In this document: positions 452 to 62,352 of the stretch, in pieces
Position numbering within the stretch: the stretch's first letter is position 1
Layout of the letters: each line of letters opens with the position of its first letter
Notes under the pieces: generated by a model
What the model was told of the DNA's origin: nothing
Database searches by the model: none
The model's input: only the letters and a program-made list of their open reading frames with translations
Program-made: the position numbers and the translations under genes
IMG/VR virus record: IMGVR_UViG_3300029984_000001
Span: 199,572 to 263,571 of that record
Length of the DNA: 64,000 bases
Direction: 5' to 3' (one strand)

Positions 452-463
452 AACCTTTAAGTA
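452..463 (+). promoter_or_regulatory. Late-type promoter variant AACC-N6-TA
   Basis: aacc tttaag ta about 20 nt upstream of the start at 486. Confidence 0.5.
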
Positions 464-485
464 TATAAGAGAGGTGTTAATATAG

Positions 486-1223
486 ATGAATTATATGGAC
501 TATGAAAAAATTTCAGATAGAGTAATGGATTTGGGATATAATACTGTTTTAAAAATGAATGTTACTTTAGCAAAGAAAAATAAGGGTGGATATAGAAATC
601 ATTACTATAAAGAATATTCTTATAAAACTAATAAGTATATAGATAAAAGTACATTATGTAATATAAGTAGAAACTTCGATTATTTTTTATCTATTGAAAG
701 ATATAGCGAAGAAAAAGATTTCTTAATGATAAGAGATGAAAATATGTTGGGATTAAGATTTGCATTAAAATCTTTGATGGATAATTGGTTTATAGAAAAA
801 CAAATATTTGCATCAAAGGATAATAGATTAATCATTATGCAAGGGTGGGAACCAATAGTAGCTATTATTTCAATGAATAAAAATTTAGTATTCACTCCAA
901 TAATAATACATAATGTAGATGATACATACAGTCCAGCTGTTAGAATGTCTTATGGTTCAGATTATAGTTATACAGATATATCTTATACAAGACTTAATGC
1001 CTTTGTATATAATATAAATTCAATGTATTTATTCCAATTAGCACAAAATATGCTGAACTTTTTTCAACGTCCAGAATTAGGAACAAATTTAACATCTTAT
1101 AATTATAATTCAGAGAGAGAAAATATGGAAGATGTTTCAGATGGAGGAGTTTCAGTTAAGGGAGGAAGTGATTTAGTATTGAAAAGAAAAAGAGATATAT
1201 TTGATACTATAGACCAAATGTAA
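486..1223 (+). CDS. Hypothetical protein
   Basis: 245-aa ORF with SD gagagg. Confidence 0.75.
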   Translation: MNYMDYEKISDRVMDLGYNTVLKMNVTLAKKNKGGYRNHYYKEYSYKTNKYIDKSTLCNISRNFDYFLSIERYSEEKDFLMIRDENMLGLRFALKSLMDNWFIEKQIFASKDNRLIIMQGWEPIVAIISMNKNLVFTPIIIHNVDDTYSPAVRMSYGSDYSYTDISYTRLNAFVYNINSMYLFQLAQNMLNFFQRPELGTNLTSYNYNSERENMEDVSDGGVSVKGGSDLVLKRKRDIFDTIDQM

Positions 1224-1254
1224 ACAAATAAATTGTGAGAGAGGGTTATTGTTT

Positions 1255-1575
1255 ATGGAAATAGTAAAATTTACACAAAAAGATTTAAGAGAATTCTTGT
1301 CGAGTTTAAAATTGGAAAAATTAACCACTGATTTTATAATAAAAGGGGTTAAATATTGTATAGATAAAAAGATATTACATATAGATATAGTTACAACACA
1401 TATTTACAATTATTTATTTGATATTACTGGAACTGAACCTAAGATTGTAAAAAGAGATATATACAAGGCAGTAAAAGGTGTAACAGCTGAAGATAAGATC
1501 ATTAAGTTTGGTTATGAAGGTAATCTTACTAATAGAAAACTATTCATAATATTATTAGAAAGATACGGATATTAA
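1255..1575 (+). CDS. Hypothetical protein
   Basis: ORF with SD gagaggg. Confidence 0.65.
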   Translation: MEIVKFTQKDLREFLSSLKLEKLTTDFIIKGVKYCIDKKILHIDIVTTHIYNYLFDITGTEPKIVKRDIYKAVKGVTAEDKIIKFGYEGNLTNRKLFIILLERYGY

Positions 1576-1586
1576 TACATAAAATA

Positions 1587-1616
1587 TACAGAGTGGTACA
1601 AGCCACTCTGTATTTT
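1587..1616. terminator. Bidirectional terminator between convergent genes
   Basis: tacagagtgg-tacaag-ccactctgta flanked by A and T tracts. Confidence 0.75.
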
Positions 1617-1619
1617 ACG

Positions 1620-2414
1620 TCAATTCATTGTATACATAATTGGTTGGTTATAGTTATCAGCTCCAACAAAAGAATCTTTAAATTCTTGAATTAAATCTGG
1701 TCTTCTTTGAGCAACAGTTTGTAAATCATCTATTCTAAGATTTGTATTCACAAATACTGTTTCTAAACCATCAAAATATTTTAAATAGTTGTATAAAAAA
1801 GTAGCTATATCAACTATAGCAAACTCTTCAAAACTTTCCATTTTAGTTGGCTCTATTGTCAATAAATTATCTGAATGTTTTATCATTAAATTAACCTTAA
1901 ATGTTTTTATATTTGTTTTATTCATATATTCTCCAGATACAGTTTGTAATTTAATCTTATTAGGTGGTTTGAAATCGATATATATTCCACTACTAAATAA
2001 AGATTGTCTATCAGCAGAACCTTGAATAGCTGCAATTTGATCAAAAGAATAATTTAAATTATTATTAAAAAATCCATAAGGAGATGATCCTACATCATAC
2101 CATCCTGGATTTTCTACACCAAATGCATAAGGATCATCCCAAGGGATATCTTGTACACCAAGTATTTCTATATTACCTGGAACTATATTCTCATCTATAA
2201 GATAAAAACCTTCTCTATCTTGGCTCATTCTAGAAGTATCAAAAGTATAAGGGATTCTATTACCAAAGAATCTTGAAAATGATCTTAACGTATAATTACT
2301 TATCCATTCCCCCCATTTATTTTTTGCTATTTCTTCTGGTAAATTCAAGGGTTCAGTTCCTAATCTTAACTCTATTAAATTAATAAGATTAGTCATATTA
2401 TTTGACATTGCCAT
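1620..2414 (-). CDS. Putative neck/head-completion protein (T4 gp13-like)
   Basis: C-terminal LKYFDGLETV...DDLQ resembles the gp13 C-terminus; cotranscribed with the prohead protease. Confidence 0.45.
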   Translation of the reverse strand: MAMSNNMTNLINLIELRLGTEPLNLPEEIAKNKWGEWISNYTLRSFSRFFGNRIPYTFDTSRMSQDREGFYLIDENIVPGNIEILGVQDIPWDDPYAFGVENPGWYDVGSSPYGFFNNNLNYSFDQIAAIQGSADRQSLFSSGIYIDFKPPNKIKLQTVSGEYMNKTNIKTFKVNLMIKHSDNLLTIEPTKMESFEEFAIVDIATFLYNYLKYFDGLETVFVNTNLRIDDLQTVAQRRPDLIQEFKDSFVGADNYNQPIMYTMN

Positions 2415-2428
2415 AAGTATCACCTCTT

Positions 2429-3298: not shown

Positions 3299-3371
3299 AA
3301 ATAATAATCCTCCTTTATATATTCTTATTATTATAGTTCAATATCTAAAATCGTTAGGTATCTATATAGGG

Positions 3372-3383
3372 AACTATATAATA
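3372..3383 (+). promoter_or_regulatory. Late promoter AACT-N6-TA
   Basis: aact atataa ta upstream of SD aaagggg. Confidence 0.65.
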
Positions 3384-3410: not shown

Positions 3411-5429
3411 ATGGCTAAATATGATGATATACAAAGCCGAATATATAACCTAAAAACTAAATCTATTATCAATGAAGAGATGGATATGTCAATGATAAAT
3501 TATAATCTATATAATAATTCTAATCTAGGAAAGACAATATCAAAAATAACAACCGATCAAATCAATTCTAATAATTTATTAGAAAGTATATGTAATATAA
3601 TTATAAAGTCTCAAATTTCAATACAAGAACAAAAAGAGATAGGAGATTCTTTAATAAGGACATTACCTAATATACAAAAAATAAAGAAGTATAAAAATTC
3701 ATTTTACGAGGTTGCAAATAAAATTAATAATCCTTTAATAAAGGATAAAGTTAATCTTCTTATAGAATGCGATCGTATAATAAATAATCAAGAAAAATTA
3801 GTAGAATATTCTAAATTCGACTTTATATTTGAAAACTATTTTTTAAATAATGATTTGGAAACAATAGTTGTTGAATCTTGTGATGTAATCGATTCTTATA
3901 AAATGAAATATGAAACTAAACTAAGTGTTGCATTAGAAAATATAATATATAATATGGATGCTTTAAAAAAAGAATATGATAAAAAAGAATTAGTTGAATT
4001 GGTATATGAATACTTCATTTCTTCTAAAGAATATAAAAAAGAGAATGTAGATAAAGTATTAAGGGAAGCTTCTATTGAATTAGATAATATTTTAATTGAT
4101 TCTATACTAGAAGGAAAAAATATTAATAAAATAAAACAAAAATTTAAAGACATGAGACATGATGGTCCTATTACTAAAGAGGCTTTAGAAAAAACAATAC
4201 ATAAAGCTTATATAGATTCTGGTCAAAATATAATTGAAGACTTACCTAATCTTTTGGGTTGTGTAAGATTGGCTTTAGTATTAATAATAGCTTCATATAG
4301 TCTACCTTTAGGGATTATAGTAGGAATTGCTGATCATATAATAAGTTTAAAATTAAATAGAGTTGATATAGAAAAGAGTATAAAGTATTATAAAAGAGAA
4401 AAAACCAAAATAGAAAGTAAAAAATACTCTGTTAGTAATGCTGCAACTGTTAAAAAGTATGATCAATTAGATAAAGAGTATGATAATAGTATAGAAAAAC
4501 TAGAGATATATAGAGATACATTATATACAGATAAAGAAAATGAATATAGAATGATGAGTGAATCTGCTGAAAATGATCCTATTAGATTACAAGCAGAATT
4601 TATTACATTGTGCGAGACAGTAGAATCTTATTGTAAAAATTCTGATATACAAGATAAACTATATAATTATATTTATAAAATAGATGACTCTAGGGATATA
4701 AATATATTATTTAATTCATTATCTGAATCGGCTGTTGCAAGTTCTAGTCTTTTTGATTTCGATACAATCTTTAGAAATTTACAGAATCCAAATATATCTG
4801 GGTCATTAATAAATAATATATCTAAATATAAAAGAAAGCCTAAACTAGATGTAAATAAAGATGATGTTGATATCCTAGAAGAGATGATCTATTATAACAA
4901 TATTTATGATATATTATCTGAAAATACTATAACAGCAAAGGCTAAATTATTAGCTATAAATGCTAAGAATAAAGTTCAAAGTCTGACTGATAAAGAAAAA
5001 ATGATATCAAATAGAATAGATACCACTTTTGATAAAATGAAATCTGATTTAGAGAATAAGAATACTAATCAAAATAGAGAGGCTGTAATTAAGGGTACAA
5101 TACTACCTTCATTATCATCTCTACTTAAATTAGTATTGGGTTCATATTTAGTTGCAATTGCTGTTACTCCATTATTAGGAATAATAGGATTTGTAGGGGG
5201 TATAGCGTTATCTAAATCTGCTACAGATAAAGAACGTAGAAATATATTGGAAGAAATAGATGTCCAATTGGAATTGGTTGAAAAGAAAATATCATTAGCA
5301 GAAAATTCTAATGATATGAAATCTCTAGAGCAATTATTAAGAATACAAAAAAGATTAAAACAAGAAAGACAAAGAATTGTTTATCATGGTTCTGCAAAAA
5401 ATTATTATGTAGCTAAACACAAAGATTAA
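3411..5429 (+). CDS. Putative virion internal protein with two hydrophobic hairpin plus coiled-coil modules
   Basis: In the head operon; hydrophobic segments LALVLIIASYSLPLGIIVGIA and LVLGSYLVAIAVTPLLGIIGFVGGIAL; several [IL]xE sites. Confidence 0.6.
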   Translation: MAKYDDIQSRIYNLKTKSIINEEMDMSMINYNLYNNSNLGKTISKITTDQINSNNLLESICNIIIKSQISIQEQKEIGDSLIRTLPNIQKIKKYKNSFYEVANKINNPLIKDKVNLLIECDRIINNQEKLVEYSKFDFIFENYFLNNDLETIVVESCDVIDSYKMKYETKLSVALENIIYNMDALKKEYDKKELVELVYEYFISSKEYKKENVDKVLREASIELDNILIDSILEGKNINKIKQKFKDMRHDGPITKEALEKTIHKAYIDSGQNIIEDLPNLLGCVRLALVLIIASYSLPLGIIVGIADHIISLKLNRVDIEKSIKYYKREKTKIESKKYSVSNAATVKKYDQLDKEYDNSIEKLEIYRDTLYTDKENEYRMMSESAENDPIRLQAEFITLCETVESYCKNSDIQDKLYNYIYKIDDSRDINILFNSLSESAVASSSLFDFDTIFRNLQNPNISGSLINNISKYKRKPKLDVNKDDVDILEEMIYYNNIYDILSENTITAKAKLLAINAKNKVQSLTDKEKMISNRIDTTFDKMKSDLENKNTNQNREAVIKGTILPSLSSLLKLVLGSYLVAIAVTPLLGIIGFVGGIALSKSATDKERRNILEEIDVQLELVEKKISLAENSNDMKSLEQLLRIQKRLKQERQRIVYHGSAKNYYVAKHKD

Positions 5430-6326: not shown

Positions 6327-6338
6327 AACAATATAGTA
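6327..6338 (+). promoter_or_regulatory. Late promoter AACA-N6-TA for the capsid gene
   Basis: aaca atatag ta followed by SD taaggagg. Confidence 0.75.
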
Positions 6339-9355: not shown

Positions 9356-9367
9356 AACTTTAAAGTA
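9356..9367 (+). promoter_or_regulatory. Late promoter AACT-N6-TA
   Basis: aact ttaaag ta. Confidence 0.6.
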
Positions 9368-10132: not shown

Positions 10133-10144
10133 AACTATAAAGTA
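10133..10144 (+). promoter_or_regulatory. Late promoter AACT-N6-TA
   Basis: aact ataaag ta. Confidence 0.6.
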
Positions 10145-14424: not shown

Positions 14425-15939
14425 ATGAAAAAATTTATGACTAGAGAACCTATTAAAAAATTCATTAATGTTTCAGATTGGGAACCTGAACCAGAAGACA
14501 TAATAATAAATCAGATAAACGATTATGTATTAATTCCTGTATCTAAATACTTTAATGCAGATCAAACAATGGATTATTTTTCAGTAAGATCAAAGAAAGT
14601 TTATAATAAAATTAAAGTAAGAGCTTTAATAGTACATAAACTTAATTATTTCGAAAAGTTCTATGATACTGATAGAGAGTTATTAACTGTTTATGCTAAT
14701 ATTAAATACCTTATTGATTGTGAACCGAATTATAGTAAAGATGCATTGTTCTATGATCTCAAAAGATACATAATAAATGGACCATCCATATCATTAAAAA
14801 TGGATTATATGAATAAGGATAATTATAGACCAGCTAAAATTAAATTTAGTGGTACAGATAGGTTATTATATTATGATAATACTCATATAGCTATAATGAT
14901 GAGGATATCATTAACAATGACATTAATTATTCCTTTATTAACACACTTCGCTAATAAAAGGAAAGTTCAAATAATAGATGAATTTCTATTAGAAATATAC
15001 AGTTACATAATAAAGGAGTATGAAGATTTTGTAGATTTATTTGAAAAATTTACAGCAACTTGTTCTACTAATATAGCTAAGAATAAAAGAAACAATGCTA
15101 TATGGAATAACCAAGACATAAGAGCTATTAATCAATCAACACATGCAATATATTCTGTCAATAATATTATACTTAATCTTATGCCTAAGTATATATATAA
15201 TGATAGTCCAGTTACGCTTAATTATGCTAGTATAGGACAGGTAATAAAATATAAGGTAACCGACGCAGGATATGATTTTGCATATACTTCTTTATCATCT
15301 TCAGATAGGGATTTAGATGAAAATTCGTCTCTAGACAAATATGAGGCAATTCTTGTAAAAAGTGACGAATCACTATTCATTCAGAATAAGGTTAATGGTG
15401 CTACTACAATGTCTAGAATAAGAATGTATTTTGGTCCTTTCGATCAAAATGAAATTGAGTTCTATAGAAAAAGACTTTTATTAGATGATAAGAGTGTTAT
15501 ACATGCTTTACAAAAAGAATTAATTTTTAATATGTTCTATAAATACTTTGGTGATACTTCCTCTAGTAATACTATAACAGAAGATGATTATATAGTATTA
15601 TTATTAACAGCTAAGAAGATTTGTTTACAATCAGACTTACTTGTTTTACCTTGTGTGTTTAGTAGTAAGATAATCAAATATACAAAGAAAACAAAGTTAA
15701 ATAAAAAAGAAAAAGATAGGATGATTGCTTCTCCTATTTATAAAATGATTATGGAGAAATATAATAATAATAAAAAGGTAGAAGCTCAAATAGAAGAATG
15801 GGCAGCCACTATATTATCATGTGAATTTGAAATTATAGATAGTAATAGAGAATCAAATAGTACTGATTATGTTGTACTACCTAAGTTTCCTGATTATGTA
15901 GTAAATGAGGTATTGAAATTTGCTTCTTGGGTATCATAA
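14425..15939 (+). CDS. Candidate promoter-specificity (sigma-like) subunit of the non-virion RNAP, AR9 gp226-like
   Basis: About 500-aa helical protein under an early-type promoter, two genes downstream of the chaperonin as with AR9 gp228/gp226; called from synteny, not alignment. Confidence 0.5.
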   Translation: MKKFMTREPIKKFINVSDWEPEPEDIIINQINDYVLIPVSKYFNADQTMDYFSVRSKKVYNKIKVRALIVHKLNYFEKFYDTDRELLTVYANIKYLIDCEPNYSKDALFYDLKRYIINGPSISLKMDYMNKDNYRPAKIKFSGTDRLLYYDNTHIAIMMRISLTMTLIIPLLTHFANKRKVQIIDEFLLEIYSYIIKEYEDFVDLFEKFTATCSTNIAKNKRNNAIWNNQDIRAINQSTHAIYSVNNIILNLMPKYIYNDSPVTLNYASIGQVIKYKVTDAGYDFAYTSLSSSDRDLDENSSLDKYEAILVKSDESLFIQNKVNGATTMSRIRMYFGPFDQNEIEFYRKRLLLDDKSVIHALQKELIFNMFYKYFGDTSSSNTITEDDYIVLLLTAKKICLQSDLLVLPCVFSSKIIKYTKKTKLNKKEKDRMIASPIYKMIMEKYNNNKKVEAQIEEWAATILSCEFEIIDSNRESNSTDYVVLPKFPDYVVNEVLKFASWVS

Positions 15940-18250: not shown

Positions 18251-18251
18251 T

Positions 18252-20460: not shown

Positions 20461-20511
20461 ATGATTGGGTGTATAAACACCCTTTTATTTTTTTATCTTT
20501 TTCTTCAGTTG

Positions 20512-20523
20512 AACATTTAGATA
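20512..20523 (+). promoter_or_regulatory. Late promoter AACA-N6-TA
   Basis: aaca tttaga ta followed by SD aaggagg. Confidence 0.7.
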
Positions 20524-20546: not shown

Positions 20547-21746
20547 ATGGGTAGTAAATTTATTAATAAAAAATATAATGATACAGTTACTAATTTAGTA
20601 GAAGGTATAAATAATAGATTAAAAAATCCCTATTATATATTTAATGATAGACAACCTACTATTACAGATTATTATAATCAATCAGAATTAGAAACATCAT
20701 TAGATGAACATCTACAACAAGAGTTTGAAGATTTAGGGGATGAATCTCCTATAAGATTCAATAAAATAGAAGACTTAGTATTATATGGAATGCCAAAGTT
20801 AGAAGCTAATTATAATATAACAGAGAATGGTTTTGAATCAGATCAACTTCAAGGAGAAGCTATATTCCTACCTAATACTATAATACCAAAAAAAGGAGAT
20901 TTCTTTAGAATAAAATATTTAAACCAACCTTTATTATTTAAAGTAATCAGTTCTACAATAGATACAATAGATAATCTTAGTAATATATATAAAATTCAAT
21001 GGGTATATGAAAGACCAGATTGTGACGAAATAGAAAAACAAGTTGTTGACAACTTTACTTCTATAACAGAAAACTCGGGTACAGAATATAAATCTGTTAT
21101 AAAGAATTCAGAATATAAATTTATAGAAAAGATAGATGAAGTATTAACAACTTTAAAAGAGTACTATAAAGTATTATTTTATTCTGATAGAGTACAGGCT
21201 TTTATTTTTTCATTTAAACATGATTTTTTCTATGATCCTTATGCAGTAGAATTCATAATTAAACATGATTTAATTAGTACATTAGACGATTATTTATACA
21301 TTACACAACAATGTAGTTTGCATGAAACTTTTGTATTTGAATATGTAAAATCTATATTTACAGCTTTAGAAAAGAAAGATAAGAACCTTGGTAAATATAA
21401 AACGTTTTCTCAGGCTGAATTTATCCAAGATGTATTCGGAGTATTCTCTTTTAGATCAGAACCTTATTATAAAATTCTATATAGAGATTATATGTTTCCA
21501 AATAAGGAGATAATAAATTTCTTAGATGAAGATTTGATCGGTAGAATATCATCAAATACTTTATATAGCGAAGATGAATTAAATTATAGAAATATTATAA
21601 TAAAACATTTTAATAATACTGATATAAAGTTAAATGATGTAGAATGTATCTCAAGTATGCAATATAATACAAGTGTTAATCTATTTTATGAGATAATATT
21701 TGTGATATATATATTAGAAAAGAATGTCAAAATATTATTAAAATAA
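20547..21746 (+). CDS. Virion structural protein (possible neck/head-closure, gp14-like N-terminus)
   Basis: Late promoter; PKKGDFFRI...LFKV motif. Confidence 0.5.
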   Translation: MGSKFINKKYNDTVTNLVEGINNRLKNPYYIFNDRQPTITDYYNQSELETSLDEHLQQEFEDLGDESPIRFNKIEDLVLYGMPKLEANYNITENGFESDQLQGEAIFLPNTIIPKKGDFFRIKYLNQPLLFKVISSTIDTIDNLSNIYKIQWVYERPDCDEIEKQVVDNFTSITENSGTEYKSVIKNSEYKFIEKIDEVLTTLKEYYKVLFYSDRVQAFIFSFKHDFFYDPYAVEFIIKHDLISTLDDYLYITQQCSLHETFVFEYVKSIFTALEKKDKNLGKYKTFSQAEFIQDVFGVFSFRSEPYYKILYRDYMFPNKEIINFLDEDLIGRISSNTLYSEDELNYRNIIIKHFNNTDIKLNDVECISSMQYNTSVNLFYEIIFVIYILEKNVKILLK

Positions 21747-21756
21747 CATTGAAATA
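21745..21756 (+). promoter_or_regulatory. Late promoter AACA-N6-TA
   Basis: aaca ttgaaa ta. Confidence 0.65.
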
Positions 21757-21785: not shown

Positions 21786-21923
21786 ATGGATTTAGAAAGT
21801 ATACTATGTTTAGAAGTAGCTGCTGATATATGTACAGAATCTATTGAGATGGATTTTAGTGTCTACGATTTTCAAATGCAAGAAAGAATGGATGATTTAG
21901 AAAGAAAAGGAGTGACATATTAA
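21786..21923 (+). CDS. 45-aa acidic protein (below the ORF-track cutoff)
   Basis: SD aaggagg; MDLESILCLE...KGVTY*; stop overlaps the next ATG. Confidence 0.65.
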   Translation: MDLESILCLEVAADICTESIEMDFSVYDFQMQERMDDLERKGVTY

Positions 21924-22863: not shown

Positions 22864-22977
22864 CACACATTAACCTATTGTGAACGCAACTTCACCAGAA
22901 GATTTTCATCTTCCCAGACTATATCATCCCTTATGGGCTACCTCTTTCGAATCTATCATAAGCTTATAGATCCTACT

Positions 22978-23850: not shown

Positions 23851-23866
23851 TTATTCTCATCTCCTT

Positions 23867-28244: not shown

Positions 28245-28256
28245 TAATTATAAGTT
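28245..28256 (-). promoter_or_regulatory. Late promoter AACT-N6-TA
   Basis: Minus strand aact tataat ta. Confidence 0.65.
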
Positions 28257-30930: not shown

Positions 30931-30942
30931 AACTTTAGAATA
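30931..30942 (+). promoter_or_regulatory. Late promoter AACT-N6-TA
   Basis: aact ttagaa ta. Confidence 0.65.
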
Positions 30943-35329: not shown

Positions 35330-35341
35330 AACATTAGACTA
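35330..35341 (+). promoter_or_regulatory. Late promoter AACA-N6-TA
   Basis: aaca ttagac ta. Confidence 0.7.
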
Positions 35342-39676: not shown

Positions 39677-41068
39677 ATGGGAATTTTATGTGATCAAGAA
39701 ATAATAAAAGCTGTGGAAAAAGGATATATATATATTGAAGGGTTCAATCCAAACAGAGAATATGATGGTAAAGGAGGATATAACGGTAGACTTGGACCTA
39801 ATAGCTATGATTTAAGTTTAAATGAAAAAATATTAATATATACAGATATTCCATTAGATATGAAAAAGAAAAATGAAACTAAAGAATTATTTATTCCAAA
39901 GGAAGGTCTAATATTATATCCAGGTAAATTATATTTAGCTATGACAAATGAATATACAAAGACTGATAATTATGTACCTATAATAGAGGGTAGGTCATCT
40001 GGTGCAAGACTAGGTATTCAAGTACATTCAGCTGGATTTGGAGATAATGGCTTCAGTGGCAGATGGACATTAGAGATAACTGTGGCTCACCCAGTAAGAA
40101 TATATGCAGGTGTCAATATATGTCAAATATATTTTCAAACACTTAAAGGAAAATCTAACAATAAGTATAATGGAAAGTATAATGACTCTAAAGATGTATT
40201 GGCTACTAAAATGTATGATGATGAGATATTTCAAACTGTTAAAGATCTAAATAGAGTATCAGTATCAGATAAAAGCATTTCATCTATGTTACGAAAAGAT
40301 GATTGTCCTAAAAAATTTGATACAACAGATAATGATAATTTTTCTATAGACTTTAGTATAAAAGGTGAGGGTGCAATATCCAAATTCATGGAACAATATA
40401 AATCCGAAATGATACAAGGATTTATAGATAATGAAAAACATAATAAATTATTAAAAGACCAAAAGAAAAAAGAACCTATTAAGTCAAATCCTTTAGGTTT
40501 CGAAACATTCTTTTATGGTGTAACACAAAAACCTAAATGGTTTAAAGCTGTTACAAATGTTAAAACTACAAAAGAAATAGAAGATGAATGGGTTGATAAA
40601 AGTGATAAACCTTTTGCAAATATTAGTAAAAGACTTAGTGATATAATTTCAAATCTAGAGACATCGATTAATGAATCTAATGCTCCTGTATCTTATAGAT
40701 TACAAGATCATGATACATCTATAATGGAATTTGTAGAACCAACAGGTGATATATTACCATTCATACTTGAAGCTGCTGGAGTGAATCGATTATTTATACA
40801 AGAGTTAGCCCAACAAGATGATAAAAAACAAATAAAAGAAATCAAAGATATGATACATGAAAATATAGAAAGATATAAAGCTTATGGTACAACTAAATTT
40901 GATGTAAAAGATTTGTTAACAGGGAAAGACATAGTTCTTGATATTTCCAATATTACATATAAAGATATAACTATATTATTGACAAACAATCAAACATTTG
41001 TAATTCAATTTACTGATGATAATATAACTGTAAGTCTAAAAGATTTTCTATTATCAATAGTTGGTTGA
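39677..41068 (+). CDS. dcd: dCTP deaminase with long C-terminal extension
   Basis: GPNSYDL, EGRSSGARLG, GFGDNGFSGRWTLE, ICQIYF, YNGKY. Confidence 0.9.
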   Translation: MGILCDQEIIKAVEKGYIYIEGFNPNREYDGKGGYNGRLGPNSYDLSLNEKILIYTDIPLDMKKKNETKELFIPKEGLILYPGKLYLAMTNEYTKTDNYVPIIEGRSSGARLGIQVHSAGFGDNGFSGRWTLEITVAHPVRIYAGVNICQIYFQTLKGKSNNKYNGKYNDSKDVLATKMYDDEIFQTVKDLNRVSVSDKSISSMLRKDDCPKKFDTTDNDNFSIDFSIKGEGAISKFMEQYKSEMIQGFIDNEKHNKLLKDQKKKEPIKSNPLGFETFFYGVTQKPKWFKAVTNVKTTKEIEDEWVDKSDKPFANISKRLSDIISNLETSINESNAPVSYRLQDHDTSIMEFVEPTGDILPFILEAAGVNRLFIQELAQQDDKKQIKEIKDMIHENIERYKAYGTTKFDVKDLLTGKDIVLDISNITYKDITILLTNNQTFVIQFTDDNITVSLKDFLLSIVG

Positions 41069-46295: not shown

Positions 46296-46307
46296 AACAT
46301 TAAGGTA
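46296..46307 (+). promoter_or_regulatory. Late promoter AACA-N6-TA
   Basis: aaca ttaagg ta, overlapping repeat copy 2. Confidence 0.65.
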
Positions 46308-48728: not shown

Positions 48729-48729
48729 A

Positions 48730-49818: not shown

Positions 49819-49886
49819 TAATTATTCCTCCTTTAAAATTTATAAAAAACGAAAGGGTAAATAATACCCTTTCATTAATTTATATA

Positions 49887-50915: not shown

Positions 50916-50940
50916 ATTAATTTTCCTCCTTAAATTTGAT

Positions 50941-50952
50941 TATTTTAAAGTT
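50941..50952 (-). promoter_or_regulatory. Late promoter AACT-N6-TA
   Basis: Minus strand aact ttaaaa ta, overlapping the 13-bp hairpin at 50947..50985. Confidence 0.65.
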
Positions 50953-50997
50953 AAACTCTCAAAAAATAAATAAGAGTTTAACTTTTTATATTTTTTA

Positions 50998-52140: not shown

Positions 52141-52171
52141 ATTAATTGTCCTCCTTTTATATTTTCTAATT

Positions 52172-52183
52172 TAATATAAAGTT
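52172..52183 (-). promoter_or_regulatory. Late promoter AACT-N6-TA
   Basis: Minus strand aact ttatat ta. Confidence 0.65.
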
Positions 52184-52201
52184 AATTGAATAACTATCAG
52201 A

Positions 52202-53347: not shown

Positions 53348-53362
53348 TATATTTTACCTCCT

Positions 53363-56333: not shown

Positions 56334-56345
56334 TAGTAATATGTT
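56334..56345 (-). promoter_or_regulatory. Late promoter AACA-N6-TA
   Basis: Minus strand aaca tattac ta. Confidence 0.7.
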
Positions 56346-56673: not shown

Positions 56674-56685
56674 AACATTTCAATA
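56674..56685 (+). promoter_or_regulatory. Late promoter AACA-N6-TA
   Basis: aaca tttcaa ta. Confidence 0.7.
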
Positions 56686-56707: not shown

Positions 56708-57661
56708 ATGGCTTATCATATTTCTTCCAATGATATAAAAAATATAAGATTAGCAAATGGTATATACCAAAGAGCTGATTTAGAATGGTATGATAAATTT
56801 TTTAGATTTGGATGTTTGAATCCTAGTGATCATTTATCGGGAACAAGGGAATATATATTTTGGACAAGACCAGATTTAAATATATTAAAACCAAACGGTG
56901 AATTGAATACTGCAATAGAGAATGATTCTTTCTTTAAAGATTGTAGGAAAAGGTATAGAAAAGTAATAGAACAATTACAAGGTTCTTTAACTAATAAACC
57001 ATTTGTTAATTTATTATCTGGTATGGTAAAATCATCTCTAGAAATTCCTGGATACTCTTGTAATGATATAGATGGTCCAGCAACATCATATGGAGATCAA
57101 ATAAGATATAGAGGTTCTACATTAACTTCTGAATCAGATGGATATGAGGTCTCTTTAGAATTTCAAGATACTAAATACTTAGAATTATATACATTCTTAA
57201 AAATATACGATACATATGAAAATTATAAACAGATGGGTGTCATTGGTCCTGATGAAAAATATACATTAAATAAACAACTTCACGATCAAATGTGTTTATA
57301 TAAAGTAATAGTTTCAGAAGATTTTGAAACTATCATATTTTGGGCAAAAGGTTGGGGTGTTTATCCTAAAAATGTTCCTGTAGATGTATTTTCAAATATG
57401 GATACAATGACTGATACGTTAAGATATTCTATTAATTTTCACGTAGAATGGTTTGATGATATGGACCCTGCTATATTATCAGAATTACATTGCTTAGGTA
57501 ATGATCCTTCTTATACTGGAGATGGAAATACTATACCTTTATATGATGTAGACAATAAAATGGTTAATGGAGTTATGTGCGATATACCGTATATTATATA
57601 CGAAGATAGTAAACTCAATACACCTACAGGTGGTAATTACAAATTAAAATGGAGGGGGTAA
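56708..57661 (+). CDS. Tail tube-fold protein (gp19/gp54-like)
   Basis: SLEIPG...EVSLEFQD...WGVYPKNVP...YSINFHVEW. Confidence 0.6.
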   Translation: MAYHISSNDIKNIRLANGIYQRADLEWYDKFFRFGCLNPSDHLSGTREYIFWTRPDLNILKPNGELNTAIENDSFFKDCRKRYRKVIEQLQGSLTNKPFVNLLSGMVKSSLEIPGYSCNDIDGPATSYGDQIRYRGSTLTSESDGYEVSLEFQDTKYLELYTFLKIYDTYENYKQMGVIGPDEKYTLNKQLHDQMCLYKVIVSEDFETIIFWAKGWGVYPKNVPVDVFSNMDTMTDTLRYSINFHVEWFDDMDPAILSELHCLGNDPSYTGDGNTIPLYDVDNKMVNGVMCDIPYIIYEDSKLNTPTGGNYKLKWRG

Positions 57662-57666: not shown

Positions 57667-60222
57667 ATGTCAGATATTATTTCTTCAGATATATATGCAA
57701 TATCTGAAATGGTTCTAGATCTAGAAAAAAAGTTTATAACAGATGCTACTGAAGATGTACTTATGGTAAGTACATATGGATACATGGGTTCTAATTTTGC
57801 TAAGATTATGAAGAATAGTGTTAGAATGGCTAGTGAATGGGGTAACGAATGCTTGTTACTCAAAGCCAAATTTGATAGTACTATATTATCAAAAGCGATA
57901 GAACTTGAGATAGGTTCTATAAGTGCTACACCTTCTATAATGAATATAATGATTGGATTTGTAGAAAATGAATTAATATCTGCTATGGTAAATAATCAAT
58001 TAATTATAAGTAGAAATTGTTTATTAAATATTGGAGATTTTGAATTTCATCTAGATCATGATTTATTAATTCAGATGGAAAAACTAATTACAGGAGAATA
58101 TATCTATACCGCTAGATATATAATGAACGAATTCTCTCCGAATTTTACTAAGATAGATAACCCTTATTTATCATCTCCACTTAGATTATTACAAGATAAT
58201 GATAATTTTATTTTTATAAATTGTGATATAATTCAAACTACTCTTAAATTTATAGATGCTCCTATTATATCTAATAATATATTAGAAAATAAAACAGTTG
58301 ATTTTGATTTTGATAAACAATTAGCATCCTTTGAAGTTATGGTTATGTCTAATAATGAAAAAATAAATCTTAAACCGATATATGAAGGTATGCCTATAGA
58401 AAATACATTATATTGTTTTTATAATTATCTAGATAGTGATACTATCAGAATAAAGTTTGATCCAGATTCATATAATCCATCTAATGGTGATACAATAGTG
58501 ATAAGAGTTCAATCTACTACAGGAGATAATGGTAACTTACCTTTTAGTTTAGATGTAACAGTAACTCTAGATGATGAAACTGATATTGTAGATTATAAAG
58601 GGTTATCATGTTTAATAAAAACATCGGATGCTACTAATGGATCTAATGGTAAAACCATGGATGAATTGAAATCTATATTACCAAAGGAATCTTTATCTAG
58701 AGGAATAATTGCGACAGAAGCAGATATAGATACTTTCTTTAATAATTTGAACGAGGATAATAAATTGATATTCAAAAAGAAAAGACATAATCAACAAGAA
58801 AGATTATATTATGCTTACTTCTTAGCAAAAGATTCTAATGATAATGTGATACCAACAAATACAATAGATTTAGAAATACTAGAAGAAGATTTTATTATAT
58901 CAAATAATAAAATTATTATAGATCCAAATTCAAGAATAGTTTATAATAGAAATACAAAATTAGGTACTATAAAAAATAAAGAAGAAGCTACTGATGAATT
59001 TATATATACTACACCATTTTCTACTGTTATAAATAATAAATTATTATATATGTCACATTATTTAAATATAGTAGATAATTCATATAAGTTTAATTACAGT
59101 TATATAAATAATAAATCATTTATTCAGTTTATATCTACTAAGATGACTATACAAAGAAATTTCTTAATAGATAGTAAATATAGAATTACTTTATCATTAA
59201 CCCAAAATACAAATGTAGATGTATCATTGATAGAATTAGATTCTAATAATAATATAATAAGTTGTAAAATAAAACCAGTGTTAGTTTTATCTCCAGATTC
59301 TACACATAATTATTATGTATATGGTGAAGTAATTGGATATGACTCTAATACATTCACATATCAAGTAGAATTTAATATAGATTCTGATAATAAGATGAAT
59401 GAATCTAATCAAATATTATTAAAAAATTTACATTTAGGAAATGGTACTACAACCACTTCTATATTTATGGATATTGAAACTAAAATGTCTATATATATGT
59501 ATGCAGATTTAGGATTAGATTATGGTTCTAATAATATGGTCCCAGATTTATATAATAGTAATTATACTTTATGTAATATTTATACAACTATAGATAATGT
59601 AGAATTGTTTTTTAATTTTTCTAGTATAATAAATACTGGGATTACTGTATATAAAAATAGTTCAGATAAAATAGTATATAAGATCAAAGGATTACCTGTT
59701 GTTAGAAAAAGTTATATACAAGATATAGATAGATGTAATAAACTAATTGATTCTTTATATTATAGAAAAGTATATATAGATACTGCTTTAGATTTTATAG
59801 AAAATGGTTTTGAAATAGATTTTAAGTTCTATAACACATACGGTCCTTCTCAAACATTAAATATTGGGTATGATGGATTGGAGTTATTGAATTCCACAAA
59901 TTTATCATTAAAATTCATAGTAAAATTAAAAAATGGTGTTGATATAAATATAATAAAGAATATGAAACAAGACATTAAACTATATATAGAAGACATAAAT
60001 AAAGAGAAGGTATCTGAAAATATGTCTAATATTAATACATTAATATCAAATAAATATAGTACAGATATAGAATTTTTTGATTTTATTAGTATTAATAATT
60101 ATGATGCTACTTATAAGTATATAGTCAAGAAAAATACAGATTTAATTGAACAAGTACCTGAATTCCTATGTATAAATTTATCCGATGATATTGAACCTGA
60201 TATAACTATTAAGAGTATTTAA
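57667..60222 (+). CDS. Baseplate wedge protein (gp6-like)
   Basis: STTGDNGN, ATNGSNGKTMDELK, RGIIATEADI. Confidence 0.75.
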   Translation: MSDIISSDIYAISEMVLDLEKKFITDATEDVLMVSTYGYMGSNFAKIMKNSVRMASEWGNECLLLKAKFDSTILSKAIELEIGSISATPSIMNIMIGFVENELISAMVNNQLIISRNCLLNIGDFEFHLDHDLLIQMEKLITGEYIYTARYIMNEFSPNFTKIDNPYLSSPLRLLQDNDNFIFINCDIIQTTLKFIDAPIISNNILENKTVDFDFDKQLASFEVMVMSNNEKINLKPIYEGMPIENTLYCFYNYLDSDTIRIKFDPDSYNPSNGDTIVIRVQSTTGDNGNLPFSLDVTVTLDDETDIVDYKGLSCLIKTSDATNGSNGKTMDELKSILPKESLSRGIIATEADIDTFFNNLNEDNKLIFKKKRHNQQERLYYAYFLAKDSNDNVIPTNTIDLEILEEDFIISNNKIIIDPNSRIVYNRNTKLGTIKNKEEATDEFIYTTPFSTVINNKLLYMSHYLNIVDNSYKFNYSYINNKSFIQFISTKMTIQRNFLIDSKYRITLSLTQNTNVDVSLIELDSNNNIISCKIKPVLVLSPDSTHNYYVYGEVIGYDSNTFTYQVEFNIDSDNKMNESNQILLKNLHLGNGTTTTSIFMDIETKMSIYMYADLGLDYGSNNMVPDLYNSNYTLCNIYTTIDNVELFFNFSSIINTGITVYKNSSDKIVYKIKGLPVVRKSYIQDIDRCNKLIDSLYYRKVYIDTALDFIENGFEIDFKFYNTYGPSQTLNIGYDGLELLNSTNLSLKFIVKLKNGVDINIIKNMKQDIKLYIEDINKEKVSENMSNINTLISNKYSTDIEFFDFISINNYDATYKYIVKKNTDLIEQVPEFLCINLSDDIEPDITIKSI

Positions 60223-60233
60223 ACATTACAATA
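60222..60233 (+). promoter_or_regulatory. Late promoter AACA-N6-TA
   Basis: aaca ttacaa ta. Confidence 0.7.
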
Positions 60234-60253
60234 ATTTTAAGGAGGAATGAATT

Positions 60254-61174
60254 ATGAAAAATCCTGTACTTGACATTTTAAAACTTCAAAAAGAAAATAT
60301 TGAAAAAGAACGAATATTAGAAAGTAAAAATAATTATGATCAAAGATTATCCGAGGAACAACAAGATATTGAAAGATATAATCATTATAAAGAATCATAC
60401 GGATTTATGGGTATGCAACCAAAACAATCTATATTTAAATCTAAGGTAGAAAAAGAATTATTATCTGAAGGTTTAAATAGAATATTCTCTAAATGTGTAA
60501 AGAGTTTATTGTATGAAAATGCAGCTTTATTAAAAAAACATTTAGTCAGCTCTTTTGTAAATGAATCAGGTGTTGATAATCTTATGAATAAATTTTCTGA
60601 AGAGTCATATTTATTATCAGAATTAACAAGATTAGTAGTAGAGTATTCTGAGATAATATGTGAGAAAGCTAGAAATAATAAAGATGAAATTATAGATCCT
60701 ACTGATAAAGAAGACTTCTATGAGAAAATAGACAGTATTGCAGATGTAGGAGATGTGCAAGATACAGTAAAATTAAGAGTTGCTGATGCTTTTAATCAAT
60801 TCAATATAAATAATACAGAAAAGAAAAGAGATATTGAAAATATAATGATTCAGTCAAGAGAAAATATTAATGCTAATATGACTGAGGAGATTATGGAATA
60901 TACAAAAATGCAAAATAAACAAAAAGAAAATGAGATTAGGAATTCAAAGAAAACAATTTTTGAATCTATGATGTATAATATAATAGAATCATGTTATAAG
61001 GATAATGATTTAAAAGAAAAGTTTTTTGAAGAATCAGGTCTACCTGATTTTGATAAAATATCAGATCATTGTAAAATAATGTATGGATTTATGGAGATGC
61101 TTAATACAACTGGAGCACAACATTTATCTCCTGAATATATTAAGGAACAAGTTGATAATTTAAGAATTTTATAG
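60254..61174 (+). CDS. Putative virion (head) protein
   Basis: Late promoter; helical; many [ILVF]xE sites. Confidence 0.55.
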   Translation: MKNPVLDILKLQKENIEKERILESKNNYDQRLSEEQQDIERYNHYKESYGFMGMQPKQSIFKSKVEKELLSEGLNRIFSKCVKSLLYENAALLKKHLVSSFVNESGVDNLMNKFSEESYLLSELTRLVVEYSEIICEKARNNKDEIIDPTDKEDFYEKIDSIADVGDVQDTVKLRVADAFNQFNINNTEKKRDIENIMIQSRENINANMTEEIMEYTKMQNKQKENEIRNSKKTIFESMMYNIIESCYKDNDLKEKFFEESGLPDFDKISDHCKIMYGFMEMLNTTGAQHLSPEYIKEQVDNLRIL

Positions 61175-61177
61175 TAA

Positions 61178-61210
61178 AATACCCATAGGAATTATCCTAT
61201 GGGTATATTT
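61178..61210. terminator. Bidirectional terminator
   Basis: atacccatagga-atta-tcctatgggtat. Confidence 0.8.
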
Positions 61211-61611
61211 TATCTATAAGTTACTCTGATGCAATTATTAAATATATTTAGATTAAATAAAAATTTGTTTTTATCAGTATTCATAAGAATATCTGTCAAA
61301 CCTTCTTTAGTCAAATAATTTTTCATTTCTCTATTATTAAAATCAAATTCTTCATAGGCTCTTTTGAATACGATATAATTTCTTTTTGTATAATCTACTA
61401 TAGATAATGCTATTTTATTTTCTAATATAGGTTTATCTATTAATTCTTTTTCATCTACAAATATGTCAAATGAATCTGATTGTCCAGCTGCATTTATAAT
61501 AGTTCCTTTTATATGATCTTCTAGAACACTTTTCATTGATATCATTAGATCAGCTCTATTAAAAGAACTATTAAAAATAAATCTTAAATACATTTGTTGT
61601 TTACAATCCAT
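61210..61611 (-). CDS. Hypothetical protein
   Basis: SD ggagggg; coupled to rusA. Confidence 0.65.
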   Translation of the reverse strand: MDCKQQMYLRFIFNSSFNRADLMISMKSVLEDHIKGTIINAAGQSDSFDIFVDEKELIDKPILENKIALSIVDYTKRNYIVFKRAYEEFDFNNREMKNYLTKEGLTDILMNTDKNKFLFNLNIFNNCIRVTYR

Positions 61612-62317
61612 TATTATCCCCTCCAAAATATTGTATAGTGTCTGATTCCATTCTATTTTTTACATTATTGTATTGATATTTATTATATAACATATTAAGA
61701 TATCTTACCGTAATTTCTACTCTTGGTAATATTGAATAGAATTTGCTTACTTTTCCATCTACAACTAAAGTATCATCTATCCATATATTACCATTAAACA
61801 TATCAGAATATTTTTTTCCTATATTATCCCAATCTGGTTTAGTAAGAGGTCTATGTAATCCTAATTCTGCTAAATATGTATCTTTTTGACTGTAAGCTGA
61901 TGGTGTTTTAAAATAAGCATTAAAATAAACTTCACATGGAGTATATATAAATTGATCTAATTGTATTAAATCATTTCCTAATAATCTTTGTATAAAGACT
62001 TGATCATCTTTAGCGTTTATTGAATAGACATGAACAAATTGACCATTATTCATAGCAGCTTGTCCAATATTTTTTCTATTAATTAATCTAAATCTAGGTC
62101 TTGGAGTTCCTTCTGGTTGTTCATATAATATAATTTTAAAATCTGTATAATATAAACTACCTAACATCATATCTCTTTGATTTAATATTTCATTACCTTT
62201 TTTTTCATTTATATTTAAACTGTCATAAAGATATTCTAATCTTTCTTTATAATCTAAAGGTATATTACCATATTTAGTTTCATATTCTTTAGCTTTAACT
62301 GCTCTATTTTGTTTCAT
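61601..62317 (-). CDS. rusA: RusA-family Holliday junction resolvase
   Basis: PRPRF, KPDWDNIGK, IWIDDTLVV, PRVEITV. Confidence 0.88.
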   Translation of the reverse strand: MKQNRAVKAKEYETKYGNIPLDYKERLEYLYDSLNINEKKGNEILNQRDMMLGSLYYTDFKIILYEQPEGTPRPRFRLINRKNIGQAAMNNGQFVHVYSINAKDDQVFIQRLLGNDLIQLDQFIYTPCEVYFNAYFKTPSAYSQKDTYLAELGLHRPLTKPDWDNIGKKYSDMFNGNIWIDDTLVVDGKVSKFYSILPRVEITVRYLNMLYNKYQYNNVKNRMESDTIQYFGGDNNGL

Positions 62318-62340
62318 AACATATCCCCCTTATCATGTGT

Positions 62341-62352
62341 CAATTATAAGTT
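62341..62352 (-). promoter_or_regulatory. Late promoter AACT-N6-TG
   Basis: Minus strand aact tataat tg. Confidence 0.55.

What the first reader, a model, noticed from the sequence alone, without database searches (positions are those of the whole stretch)
452..62352. AAC[AT]-N6-T[AG] late promoters match the uracil-reading AR9 consensus: possible dU-DNA phage
Seen: an exactly spaced AAC[A/T]-N6-T[A/G] motif lies shortly upstream of genes, mostly structural. Plus strand: 3372, 6327, 9356, 10133, 20512, 21745, 30931, 35330, 46296, 56674, 60222, and AACC at 452. Minus strand: 28256, 50952, 52183, 56345, 62352. Established: AR9 late promoters are AACA-N6-TA/G, and its non-virion RNAP needs template-strand uracils opposite the AA. 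Inference: with the dCTP deaminase and gp226 candidate here, this phage may carry U instead of T. Its fourth promoter position is relaxed (A or T).
Basis: partly seen in the sequence, partly recalled or inferred. Interest (0 to 1): 0.75.

Follow-up and report, generated by a model that had tools for sequence, protein, structure and literature searches.

The report
AR9-like late promoters, probably thymine DNA
The repeated AAC[A/T]-N6-T[A/G] motif is a real promoter family of a peat jumbo phage that carries its own AR9-type RNA polymerase, but the genome also encodes the enzymes for making thymidine nucleotides, so the idea that its DNA holds uracil instead of thymine is not supported.

Summary
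All 17 listed sites exist. The motif is about 2.7-fold over dinucleotide shuffles in sense-oriented upstream regions, in the window (20 vs 7.3±2.4) and in the rest of the 263.6-kb genome (66 vs 26.9±5.1). It peaks 25-45 nt before start codons.

The learned consensus is AAC[A/T]T-N3-A-N-TAA. The same pipeline on AR9 recovers AACA only, so the relaxed fourth position is real. Two relatives share it.

The genome has all four split nvRNAP beta/beta' genes and a full-length gp226 homologue (window 14425-15939). A second, AR9-like early promoter family drives those genes. The late-promoter reading is therefore well supported.

The uracil inference is not supported:
- The genome encodes an intact ThyA (NCBIfam equivalog, composition matches the phage), a thymidylate kinase and the dCTP deaminase.
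- ThyA, that kinase and that deaminase fold are absent from AR9, BpSp, LPJP1, S6 and phiR1-37.
- It lacks all three known dT-nucleotide-degrading families, the Zn-type dCTP deaminase and PBS-type Ugi.
- The uracil-discriminating Val206 of gp226 is not conserved.

Most likely this is a thymine-DNA relative with a variant AR9-type late promoter. Only chemistry on the DNA can settle it.

The parts
452..463 (+). Late-type site AACCTTTAAGTA, 34 nt before the gene 486-1223. It is a C-variant at the fourth position.
   Evidence: The AACC class as a whole is not enriched. The site does fit T4, A8, T10 and A11 of the learned matrix.
3372..3383 (+). Late promoter AACTATATAATA, 39 nt before the 672-aa gene 3411-5429.
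6327..6338 (+). Late promoter AACAATATAGTA, 42 nt before the major head protein gene 6369-8129.
   Evidence: phrog_20655 major head protein, E 2.6e-17.
9356..9367 (+). Late-type site AACTTTAAAGTA, followed by a hairpin and then a 19-codon ORF with a strong SD (ATG at 9440). The next larger gene starts at 9526.
   Evidence: This is the least certain of the 17 sites.
10133..10144 (+). Late promoter AACTATAAAGTA, 49 nt before the gene 10182-10964.
20512..20523 (+). Late promoter AACATTTAGATA, 35 nt before the virion structural protein gene 20547-21746.
   Evidence: 8.4 bits, held out; phrog_3013; homologue of AR9 g165 virion protein.
21745..21756 (+). Late promoter AACATTGAAATA, 41 nt before the small gene 21786-21923.
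28245..28256 (-). Late promoter AACTTATAATTA, 39 nt before the gene 27837-28217 (minus strand).
30931..30942 (+). Late promoter AACTTTAGAATA, 25 nt before the 872-aa P-loop NTPase/endonuclease gene 30956-33574.
35330..35341 (+). Late promoter AACATTAGACTA, 30 nt before the gene 35360-36925.
46296..46307 (+). Late promoter AACATTAAGGTA, 58 nt before the gene 46354-47532 (homologue of AR9 g218).
50941..50952 (-). Late promoter AACTTTAAAATA, 37 nt before the gene 49887-50915 (minus strand, member of a paralogue array).
52172..52183 (-). Late promoter AACTTTATATTA, 43 nt before the gene 50998-52140 (minus strand).
56334..56345 (-). Late promoter AACATATTACTA, 37 nt before the virion structural protein gene 54428-56308 (minus strand).
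   Evidence: phrog_23804; AR9 g214.
56674..56685 (+). Late promoter AACATTTCAATA, 34 nt before the virion structural protein gene 56708-57661.
   Evidence: 9.9 bits; phrog_21400; AR9 g213.
60222..60233 (+). Late promoter AACATTACAATA, 32 nt before the gene 60254-61174.
62341..62352 (-). Late promoter AACTTATAATTG, 35 nt before the RusA-like resolvase gene 61601-62317 (minus strand).
   Evidence: phrog_140.
14425..15939 (+). Homologue of gp226, the promoter-specificity subunit of the AR9 nvRNAP. It is preceded by an early-type promoter whose core starts at 14395.
   Evidence: BLASTP to AR9 gp226: 23% identity, E 2e-7. Profile-profile comparison: 99.8%, E 6e-28 over 443 columns. The clade profile hits only PDB 7s01_A/7um0/7um1, E 3e-23. 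Gene order GroEL-g227-g226-primase matches AR9 and phiR1-37.
39677..41068 (+). dCTP deaminase (DCD/dUTPase fold, residues 1-185) fused to a C-terminal part of about 280 aa with unknown function.
   Evidence: PF22769 E 3e-31. TIGR02274 104.9 bits against a cut-off of 92.8. phrog_1663. The C-terminal part gave no usable match.

Best explanation
The motif is the late (non-virion RNA polymerase) promoter of a jumbo phage from peat that is a distant relative of Bacillus phage AR9.

Proposed cycle. The injected virion RNAP reads a long AT-rich early promoter (TTATAATT[A/G]TATATTATA-N4-TG). This promoter sits in front of the genes for three of the four split nvRNAP beta/beta' subunits and for the gp226-like specificity subunit. 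The assembled nvRNAP then starts at AAC[A/T]T-N3-A-N-T-A/G, with the last A/G as the start site. That leaves 5' leaders of about 15-45 nt in front of head, tail, portal, terminase and virion-RNAP genes.

By analogy with AR9, the AAC core is read as 3'-TTG-5' (or UUG) on the template strand by the gp226-like subunit together with the beta-N subunit.

Differences from AR9: position -8 accepts A or T. There is added conservation at -7 (T), -3 (A) and +2 (A).

The DNA most probably contains ordinary thymine. The phage encodes dCTP deaminase, thymidylate synthase and thymidylate kinase, and lacks the known thymidine-nucleotide-destroying enzymes of uracil-DNA phages.

Shown: motif statistics, positions, gene content, homologies. 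Inferred: which polymerase reads the motif, the start site, template-strand reading, and the base composition of the DNA.

The confidence given is for the whole statement: about 0.85 for the late-promoter reading, times about 0.65-0.7 for thymine DNA.
For: Motif:
- Sense-specific enrichment and a sharp peak 25-45 nt before start codons.
- Held-out test in the window, p = 6e-8.
- The same pipeline recovers the published AACA-N6-TR in AR9 (67 sites near starts; AACT 8, no more than background). Here it gives AACA 40 and AACT 31.
- Relatives G003 and G007 show the same AACA plus AACT pattern.

Machinery:
- nvRNAP beta-C, beta-N, beta'-C and beta'-N homologues at genome 117376, 124712, 191925 and 63085; virion RNAP pieces are also present.
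- gp226 homologue.
- No sigma-70 family gene.

Regulatory logic as in AR9 (PMC5312081):
- Early promoters precede the gp226-like gene and the nvRNAP genes at 62999, 117274 and 191900.
- Late motifs precede the major head protein, portal, terminase, tape measure and virion RNAP beta genes.

Thymine:
- ThyA equivalog with all catalytic residues, GC3 13%.
- Tmk, E 7e-40.
- ThyA, Tmk and the DCD fold are absent from AR9, phiR1-37, BpSp, LPJP1 and S6.
- No NT5C, Ham1 or YfbR-type dT-nucleotide hydrolase, no Zn-type Dcd, no PBS-type Ugi.
- No Val at the Val206 position. Tyr210 is replaced by Asn. Beta-N Lys375 is replaced by Ile, while Arg363 is kept.
Against: - No transcript data exist for this phage: no RNA run holds it. 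Start sites and timing are inferred.
- Several late-motif genes are replication genes (DnaB-like helicase, a DNA polymerase part, UvsX). This fits AR9's 'continuously expressed' class but blurs the label 'late'.
- On thymine: there is no dUTPase. The route from dUTP to dUMP therefore needs the host or an unrecognised activity, and a dCTP deaminase without dUTPase would raise dUTP.
- ThyA is present in only 6 of 40 large relatives, so it is accessory in the clade.
- Ala still has a C-beta, so loss of Val does not prove thymine tolerance.
- Unknown analogues of Ugi, a dTMPase or a dUTPase inhibitor could hide among the roughly 80% of ORFs (254 of 306) without an AR9 homologue.
Confidence: 0.6

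Rival explanations
1. These are AR9-type late promoters and the phage DNA carries deoxyuridine in place of thymidine. The nvRNAP needs template-strand uracils opposite the AA.
For: - The promoter core, spacing and machinery match AR9.
- The isolates carrying the nearest detectable gp226 homologues are dU or presumed dU phages (PMC9209446).
- A dCTP deaminase is present and a dUTPase is absent.
- No UDG gene.
- Most clade relatives lack ThyA.
Against: - Intact ThyA and Tmk, both compositionally at home in the phage.
- None of the three known dT-depleting enzyme families and no Zn-type Dcd.
- No PBS-type Ugi or AR9 g151 homologue.
- The five dU isolates lack ThyA, Tmk and the DCD fold.
- Val206, invariant in the dU isolates, is absent here and highly variable across 80 relatives.
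Confidence: 0.2
2. The DNA carries another pyrimidine modification, for example a 5-substituted uracil made through a ThyA-like enzyme, rather than plain T or U.
For: - ThyA-family enzymes include dUMP and dCMP hydroxymethylases.
- The dCTP deaminase has an unexplained C-terminal part of about 280 aa.
- A weak N6-adenine methylase-like ORF lies next to thyA.
Against: - The protein passes the curated ThyA equivalog cut-off.
- Its best solved relatives are true thymidylate synthases (B. subtilis ThyA, E 3e-60).
- It keeps the Cys, Asn and Arg catalytic set.
- No other modification gene was sought or seen.
Confidence: 0.07
3. The motif is read by host RNA polymerase, as a -10-like element, possibly with a phage factor, as T4 late promoters are. 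The phage nvRNAP is not involved.
For: The downstream half (A-N-T-A-A-t) is AT-rich and loosely resembles -10 or T4-late-like sequences.
Against: - The most conserved part is AAC, which no sigma-70 or gp55-type element has.
- No -35 element and no conservation upstream of AAC.
- No sigma-70 family gene in the phage.
- The same architecture is experimentally assigned to nvRNAP in AR9.
- The motif is conserved in relatives that share the gp226-like gene.
Confidence: 0.04
4. The sites are chance matches of a short degenerate pattern in 75% A+T DNA.
For: The pattern is frequent (153 in the window) and is not over-represented overall.
Against: - Strand-specific and position-specific enrichment.
- Extra conserved positions that the pattern did not ask for.
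- The held-out test.
- The AR9 positive control.
- The AAC[CG] negative control.
Confidence: 0.01

Closest known systems
AR9/PBS1 late promoters, read by the nvRNAP holoenzyme with gp226 (PMC5312081, PMC5449584, PMC9209446)
   Same: - AAC at -11 to -9, six-base spacer, T at -1, A/G at +1.
- Located a few tens of nt before late and structural genes.
- Split beta/beta' nvRNAP genes and a full-length gp226 homologue in the same gene order.
- Early promoters in front of the polymerase genes.
   Different: - Position -8 is A or T (53-62% A, 36-42% T) instead of A (84% in AR9 by the same pipeline).
- Stronger T at -7, A at -3 and A at +2. No T preference at -2.
- gp226 is only about 23% identical to AR9's.
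- The 2.1bis helix reads NNAIWNNQ here, against DVVIWTY in AR9.
- Beta-N Lys375 is replaced by Ile.
AR9 early (virion RNAP) promoters, AAATATATATTAT-N6-G
   Same: The window's second motif has the same TATATTAT core and the same six-base distance to a conserved G.
   Different: - Longer upstream conservation (TTATAATT).
- A conserved T before the G and AA after it.
Uracil-DNA phages PBS1/AR9, phiR1-37 and DSS3_VP1 (pathway in PMC12697855)
   Same: Relatedness of the jumbo-phage core genes. A dCTP-deaminating activity is encoded. No dUTPase and no UDG.
   Different: - The deaminase here is of the trimeric DCD fold, not the Zn-deaminase family.
- No Dtm or Dtt family enzyme.
- ThyA and Tmk are present.
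- No PBS-type Ugi.
phiKZ nvRNAP with gp68 and its late promoters (TATG)
   Same: The same class of five-subunit phage polymerase, with a sigma-like fifth subunit homologous to gp226 (PMC9209446).
   Different: The phiKZ consensus is different and phiKZ has thymine DNA. The window's promoter follows the AR9 pattern, not the phiKZ one.

Membership tests
AR9-type nvRNAP late promoter | AAC at positions -11 to -9 (non-template strand) | tested here: met
   This was the anchor of the learned matrix. AAC sites show a sharp peak 30-44 nt before start codons.
AR9-type nvRNAP late promoter | A at position -8 | tested here: not met
   A 53-62% and T 36-42% here, against A 84% and T 10% in AR9 with the identical pipeline. 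The same relaxation is seen in relatives G003 and G007.
AR9-type nvRNAP late promoter | Six-base spacer, then T and A/G | tested here: met
   T 95%, then A 85% / G 12% in the mixture model. This holds in all 17 window sites.
AR9-type nvRNAP late promoter | Transcription starts at the final A/G, late in infection | not testable with these tools
   No RNA run holds this sequence. The phage is known only from peat metagenomes.
AR9-type nvRNAP late promoter | Sits before late and structural genes, with the polymerase genes under early promoters | tested here: met
   Late motif before the major head protein, portal, terminase, tape measure and virion RNAP beta genes. Early motif before the gp226-like gene and three nvRNAP genes.
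gp226 family (sigma-like nvRNAP specificity subunit) | Full-length sequence homology to AR9 gp226 | tested here: met
   hhalign 99.8%, E 6e-28, 443 columns. The clade profile hits only PDB 7s01_A/7um0/7um1, E 3e-23.
gp226 family (sigma-like nvRNAP specificity subunit) | Conserved gene neighbourhood GroEL - g227 - g226 - primase | tested here: met
   Window genes 11617-13536, 13592-14389, 14425-15939 and 15940-16986 match AR9 g228, g227, (g226) and g225. The same order is seen in phiR1-37.
Uracil-specific gp226 (as in AR9, BpSp, LPJP1, S6, phiR1-37) | Val206 of the 2.1bis helix, which clashes with the thymine methyl group; invariant in dU phages | tested here: not met
   The window has NNAIW against D-x-V-I-W in the six isolate sequences. 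Across 80 IMG/VR relatives the position holds V, I, T, K, P, G, A, S, L and others.
Uracil-specific gp226 (as in AR9, BpSp, LPJP1, S6, phiR1-37) | Other pocket residues: Ile207, Trp208, aromatic 210, beta-N Arg363 and Lys375 | tested here: inconclusive
   Ile207 and Trp208 are kept. Residue 210 is Asn. Beta-N Arg363 is kept (Arg378). Lys375 aligns with Ile390. At 23-26% identity the alignment is not a structure.
dU-DNA phage (PBS1, phiR1-37, DSS3_VP1 pathway, PMC12697855) | Phage Dcd of the Zn-dependent dCMP-deaminase family supplying dUTP | tested here: not met
   PF00383 is absent and there is no AR9 g221 homologue. A DCD-fold dCTP deaminase is present instead. None of the five dU isolates has that fold.
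dU-DNA phage (PBS1, phiR1-37, DSS3_VP1 pathway, PMC12697855) | Enzyme that destroys dTMP or dTTP (NT5C, YfbR-HD or Ham1 family) | tested here: not met
   PF06941, PF12917 and PF01725 are all absent. An unknown analogue cannot be excluded.
dU-DNA phage (PBS1, phiR1-37, DSS3_VP1 pathway, PMC12697855) | No phage thymidylate synthesis | tested here: not met
   ThyA equivalog (348.8 bits against a cut-off of 327) and Tmk (133.8 bits) are present. Both are absent from all five dU isolates.
dU-DNA phage (PBS1, phiR1-37, DSS3_VP1 pathway, PMC12697855) | Uracil-DNA glycosylase inhibitor | tested here: inconclusive
   No tblastn match to AR9 Ugi at E <= 1. Ugi-like proteins are small and diverse, and other dU phages lack the PBS type.
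dU-DNA phage (PBS1, phiR1-37, DSS3_VP1 pathway, PMC12697855) | Deoxyuridine instead of thymidine in virion DNA | not testable with these tools
   Sequence reads show U as T. No isolate exists.

The most novel reading that the evidence does not exclude
This phage, and perhaps much of its large uncultivated clade, is a natural thymine-tolerant version of the AR9 system. A gp226-type subunit would read the -10-like element 3'-TTG[T/A]-5' on the template strand of ordinary T-DNA. Nature would then have done what the engineered V206G mutant of AR9 gp226 does. Uracil dependence would be a derived trait of the AR9/S6/phiR1-37 branch, not a property of the family.
Probability: 0.5. Interest if true: 0.6.

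Novelty: new variant of a known kind. Interest (0 to 1): 0.45.

Why it matters
Template-strand promoter reading by gp226 has been worked out only in AR9, where it is tied to uracil DNA.

This genome shows the same promoter architecture and the same subunit family in a distant peat phage. That phage encodes its own thymidylate synthase and kinase, and it lacks the uracil-discriminating valine.

The subunit family is large. At least 209 protein clusters were found, many of them on 200-340 kb contigs.

If the DNA does contain thymine, the clade offers natural sequence variants for testing how U/T discrimination arose. It also gives a ready promoter consensus (AAC[A/T]T-N3-A-N-TAA) for annotating late genes in such metagenomic jumbo phages.

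The result is also a caution. An AR9-like promoter together with a dCTP deaminase is not enough to predict uracil DNA.

Tried and rejected
- Megablast of a window gene against phage records found nothing. Relatives are visible only at protein level.
- Unseeded EM on upstream regions converged on intrinsic terminators (a GC stem followed by TTTATTTTTT), not on promoters. A first AAC-anchored mixture collapsed because the anchor columns were scored. This was repaired.
- The most frequent 12-mers in the genome turned out to be coding repeats of Kelch-like genes, not regulatory elements.
- An iteratively sharpened matrix narrowed to an AACAT-only subclass and lost the true AACT sites. It served only as a conservative held-out test.
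- Transcript evidence: no RNA run holds the sequence. Read laying was not used, because DNA contigs cannot tell U from T.
- Association between Val at the 206 position and absence of ThyA across relatives: 0 of 7 ThyA-positive genomes have Val, against 14 of 39 ThyA-negative ones. My hand calculation gives about p = 0.06 one-sided, and the genomes are not phylogenetically independent. This is not evidence.
- Palindrome avoidance as a proxy for unmodified DNA: AR9, a true dU phage, avoids palindromes as strongly as this genome does. The test is uninformative.
- The C-terminal 280 aa of the dCTP deaminase fusion gave no Pfam, PDB-sequence or Atlas match.
- Monofunctional versus dUMP-forming dCTP deaminase could not be decided from the PDB matches.

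Full report
**Source.** The window is the last 64 kb of a single 263,571-bp virus record. Its G+C content is about 25%. The phage is known from many peat metagenomes. It has no close DNA relative among sequenced phages. At protein level, 52 of 306 ORFs match Bacillus phage AR9 at 22-44% identity. These include the four fragments of the non-virion RNA polymerase, pieces of the virion polymerase, portal, terminase, tape measure, GroEL, primase and several virion proteins. The nearest isolates for one window protein are Listeria LPJP1, the Staphylococcus S6 group, the Bacillus AR9/PBS1 group, Fusobacterium phages and Yersinia phiR1-37.

**Observation.**
- Over the whole window the degenerate pattern is rarer than in shuffles (153 vs 256±15), so only context can give it meaning.
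- I used a simple ORF call with SD-based start refinement. With it, the pattern is enriched in sense-oriented upstream regions:
  - genome-wide, 88 vs 34.5±5.4, antisense 32;
  - window alone, 20 vs 7.3±2.4, maximum 16 in 300 shuffles;
  - rest of the genome, 66 vs 26.9±5.1.
- Sites cluster 25-45 nt before start codons.
It assigns about 62 sites among 193 upstream regions.
- The extended pattern gives 11 vs 1.2±1.1 in the window and 36 vs 3.9±1.9 elsewhere. AAC[CG] is not enriched.
- A matrix trained only outside the window separates promoter-zone AAC sites from all others inside it (7/54 vs 7/1661, p = 6e-8).

**Positive control and the fourth position.** The identical pipeline on AR9 (sequence) recovers the published AACA-N6-T[A/G]. 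It finds 67 AACA sites near starts and 8 AACT, with A at 84% at that position. In this genome AACA gives 40 and AACT 31, against 17 and 13 on the antisense strand. The relaxed fourth position is therefore real. Two near-complete relatives show the same pattern: G003 with 15 and 17 sites, and G007 with 52 and 36.

**A second promoter family.** About 39 upstream regions carry TTATAATT[A/G]TATATTATA-N4-TG(AA).
- This has the core and spacing of the AR9 early promoter AAATATATATTAT-N6-G(+1).
- Ten copies lie in the window. One sits directly before the gp226-like gene. Others precede the nvRNAP genes at 63085, 117376 and 191925.
- A few early promoters with a TATAAC[TC] variant match AAC[TC]-N6-TA by accident, for example window 33602.
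- Late motifs precede the major head protein (window 6369-8129, phrog_20655), virion structural proteins (20547, 54428-56308, 56708), portal, terminase, tape measure and virion RNAP beta. They also precede some replication genes. AR9's continuously expressed genes behave the same way.
- No sigma-70 family gene is present.

**The specificity subunit.** Window 14425-15939 lies between homologues of AR9 g227 and the primase, after GroEL. This is the position of g226 in AR9 and g245 in phiR1-37.
- Pairwise identity to gp226 is 23% (E 2e-7).
- A profile of its relatives aligns to a profile of six isolate sequences from five phage types with 99.8% probability over 443 columns.
- That profile hits only the AR9 gp226 chains in the PDB (E 3e-23).
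- The family is large. There are 209 protein clusters at E <= 1e-3, many on 200-340 kb contigs.

**The uracil question, gene content.**
- AR9's requirement for U at -11 and -10 rests on a pocket formed by gp226 Val206/Ile207 and beta-N Arg363/Lys375. V206G admits thymine. The valine is invariant in gp226 homologues of dU phages. I confirmed D-x-V-I-W in AR9, BpSp, LPJP1, S6, SA1 and phiR1-37.
- The window protein reads NNAIW, with no valine. Tyr210 is Asn. Across 80 relatives the position is highly variable.
- Beta-N keeps the stacking Arg, but Lys375 aligns with Ile.
- The genome encodes a thymidylate synthase that passes the curated NCBIfam equivalog cut-off (348.8 vs 327 bits). It is most like B. 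subtilis ThyA (E 3e-60), keeps the catalytic residues, and has GC3 13% like the rest of the phage. By my hand reading of the promoter positions, phage-type promoters lie on both sides of it.
- The genome also encodes a thymidylate kinase and the DCD-fold dCTP deaminase.
- AR9, phiR1-37, BpSp, LPJP1 and S6 have none of these three.

**The uracil question, pathway comparison.**
- The experimentally defined dU pathway uses a Zn-type Dcd plus a dTMP phosphatase or dTTP pyrophosphatase of the NT5C, YfbR-HD or Ham1 family. All four families are absent here. So are homologues of AR9 Ugi, g151 and g221.
- Also absent: dUTPase, ThyX, DHFR, UDG and class I/II RNR.
- Among 40 near-complete relatives, ThyA occurs in 6, DCD in 17-22 and Tmk in 18-20. 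Nucleotide metabolism is mosaic across the clade. The DNA chemistry of the ThyA-less members remains open.

**Conclusion.**
- The promoter part of the finding is right, and it can be sharpened to AAC[A/T]T-N3-A-N-TAA, read by an AR9-type nvRNAP with a divergent gp226.
It cannot be excluded without chemistry, because there is no dUTPase and unknown analogues may exist.
- I put about 0.85 on the late-promoter reading. Given that, I put about 0.65-0.7 on thymine DNA, 0.2 on uracil DNA, and the remainder on another modification.

Noticed in passing
Window, first base of the TATATTAT core: plus strand 14395, 17920, 28303, 33607, 36945, 38723, 42059; minus strand 22627, 23882, 56648: Ten copies of an early-type promoter, TTATAATT[A/G]TATATTATA-N4-TG. 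It has the core and spacing of the AR9 virion-RNAP early promoter. About 39 copies occur genome-wide, including in front of the gp226-like gene and three nvRNAP subunit genes.
   Followed up: yes
Window 39677-41068: The dCTP deaminase domain (residues 1-185) is fused to a C-terminal part of about 280 aa that has no detectable relatives. In most relatives the DCD gene is a stand-alone ORF of 170-260 aa.
   Followed up: partly
Genome G000:C1:20058-20894 and 134862-135464 (outside the window): Intact thymidylate synthase and thymidylate kinase genes. Both are absent from the five sequenced AR9-clade dU isolates and patchy among 40 metagenomic relatives.
   Followed up: yes
Window 22657-25522, minus strand: The virion RNAP beta' N-terminal gene appears to be split. 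Window 24014-25522 and 22657-22866 both match AR9 g145. They are separated by an ORF (22978-23850) that matches the AR9 g271 HNH homing-endonuclease region. This suggests an intron or other mobile insertion like those in AR9 polymerase genes.
   Followed up: no
Window 47556-54412, minus strand: An array of six genes of 342-390 aa. Five are detectable paralogues: 50998-52140 and 52202-53347 are 48% identical, the others 23-33%. The sixth (53363-54412) matches a virion structural protein family and AR9 g215.
   Followed up: partly
Genome about 148.8-156 kb (outside the window): A cluster of genes full of about 46-48-codon repeats that read like Kelch-type motifs (…YNGKIYCIGG…). They account for the most frequent 12-mers in the genome.
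   Followed up: no
Many intergenic regions, e.g. window 20465-20500 and 50960-50990: A GC-rich hairpin followed by TTTATTTTTT recurs downstream of genes. It looks like an intrinsic terminator and was the strongest signal in unseeded motif discovery. Two pattern matches (20476, 50978) are parts of such terminators, not promoters.
   Followed up: partly
Window 1879 (-), 21604 (+), 55089 (-), 61222 (-): High-scoring late-type motifs lie inside coding regions in the sense orientation (for example AACATTCAGATAAT and AACATTTTAATAAT). They may be internal promoters like the 13 reported in AR9.
   Followed up: no
Loci L023-L102 (IMG/VR) and proteins P0001-P0120: The gp226-like subunit defines a large uncultivated clade of 200-340 kb phages, many with terminal repeats and estimated as complete. 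The residue aligned with AR9 Val206 is highly variable in this clade, while Trp208 is almost invariant (one Phe among 86 sequences).
   Followed up: partly
Window 30956-33574: An 872-aa protein joins a P-loop (STAND-like) NTPase region to a Zn-finger endonuclease part. The endonuclease part is homologous to AR9 g233, which is only 238 aa.
   Followed up: no
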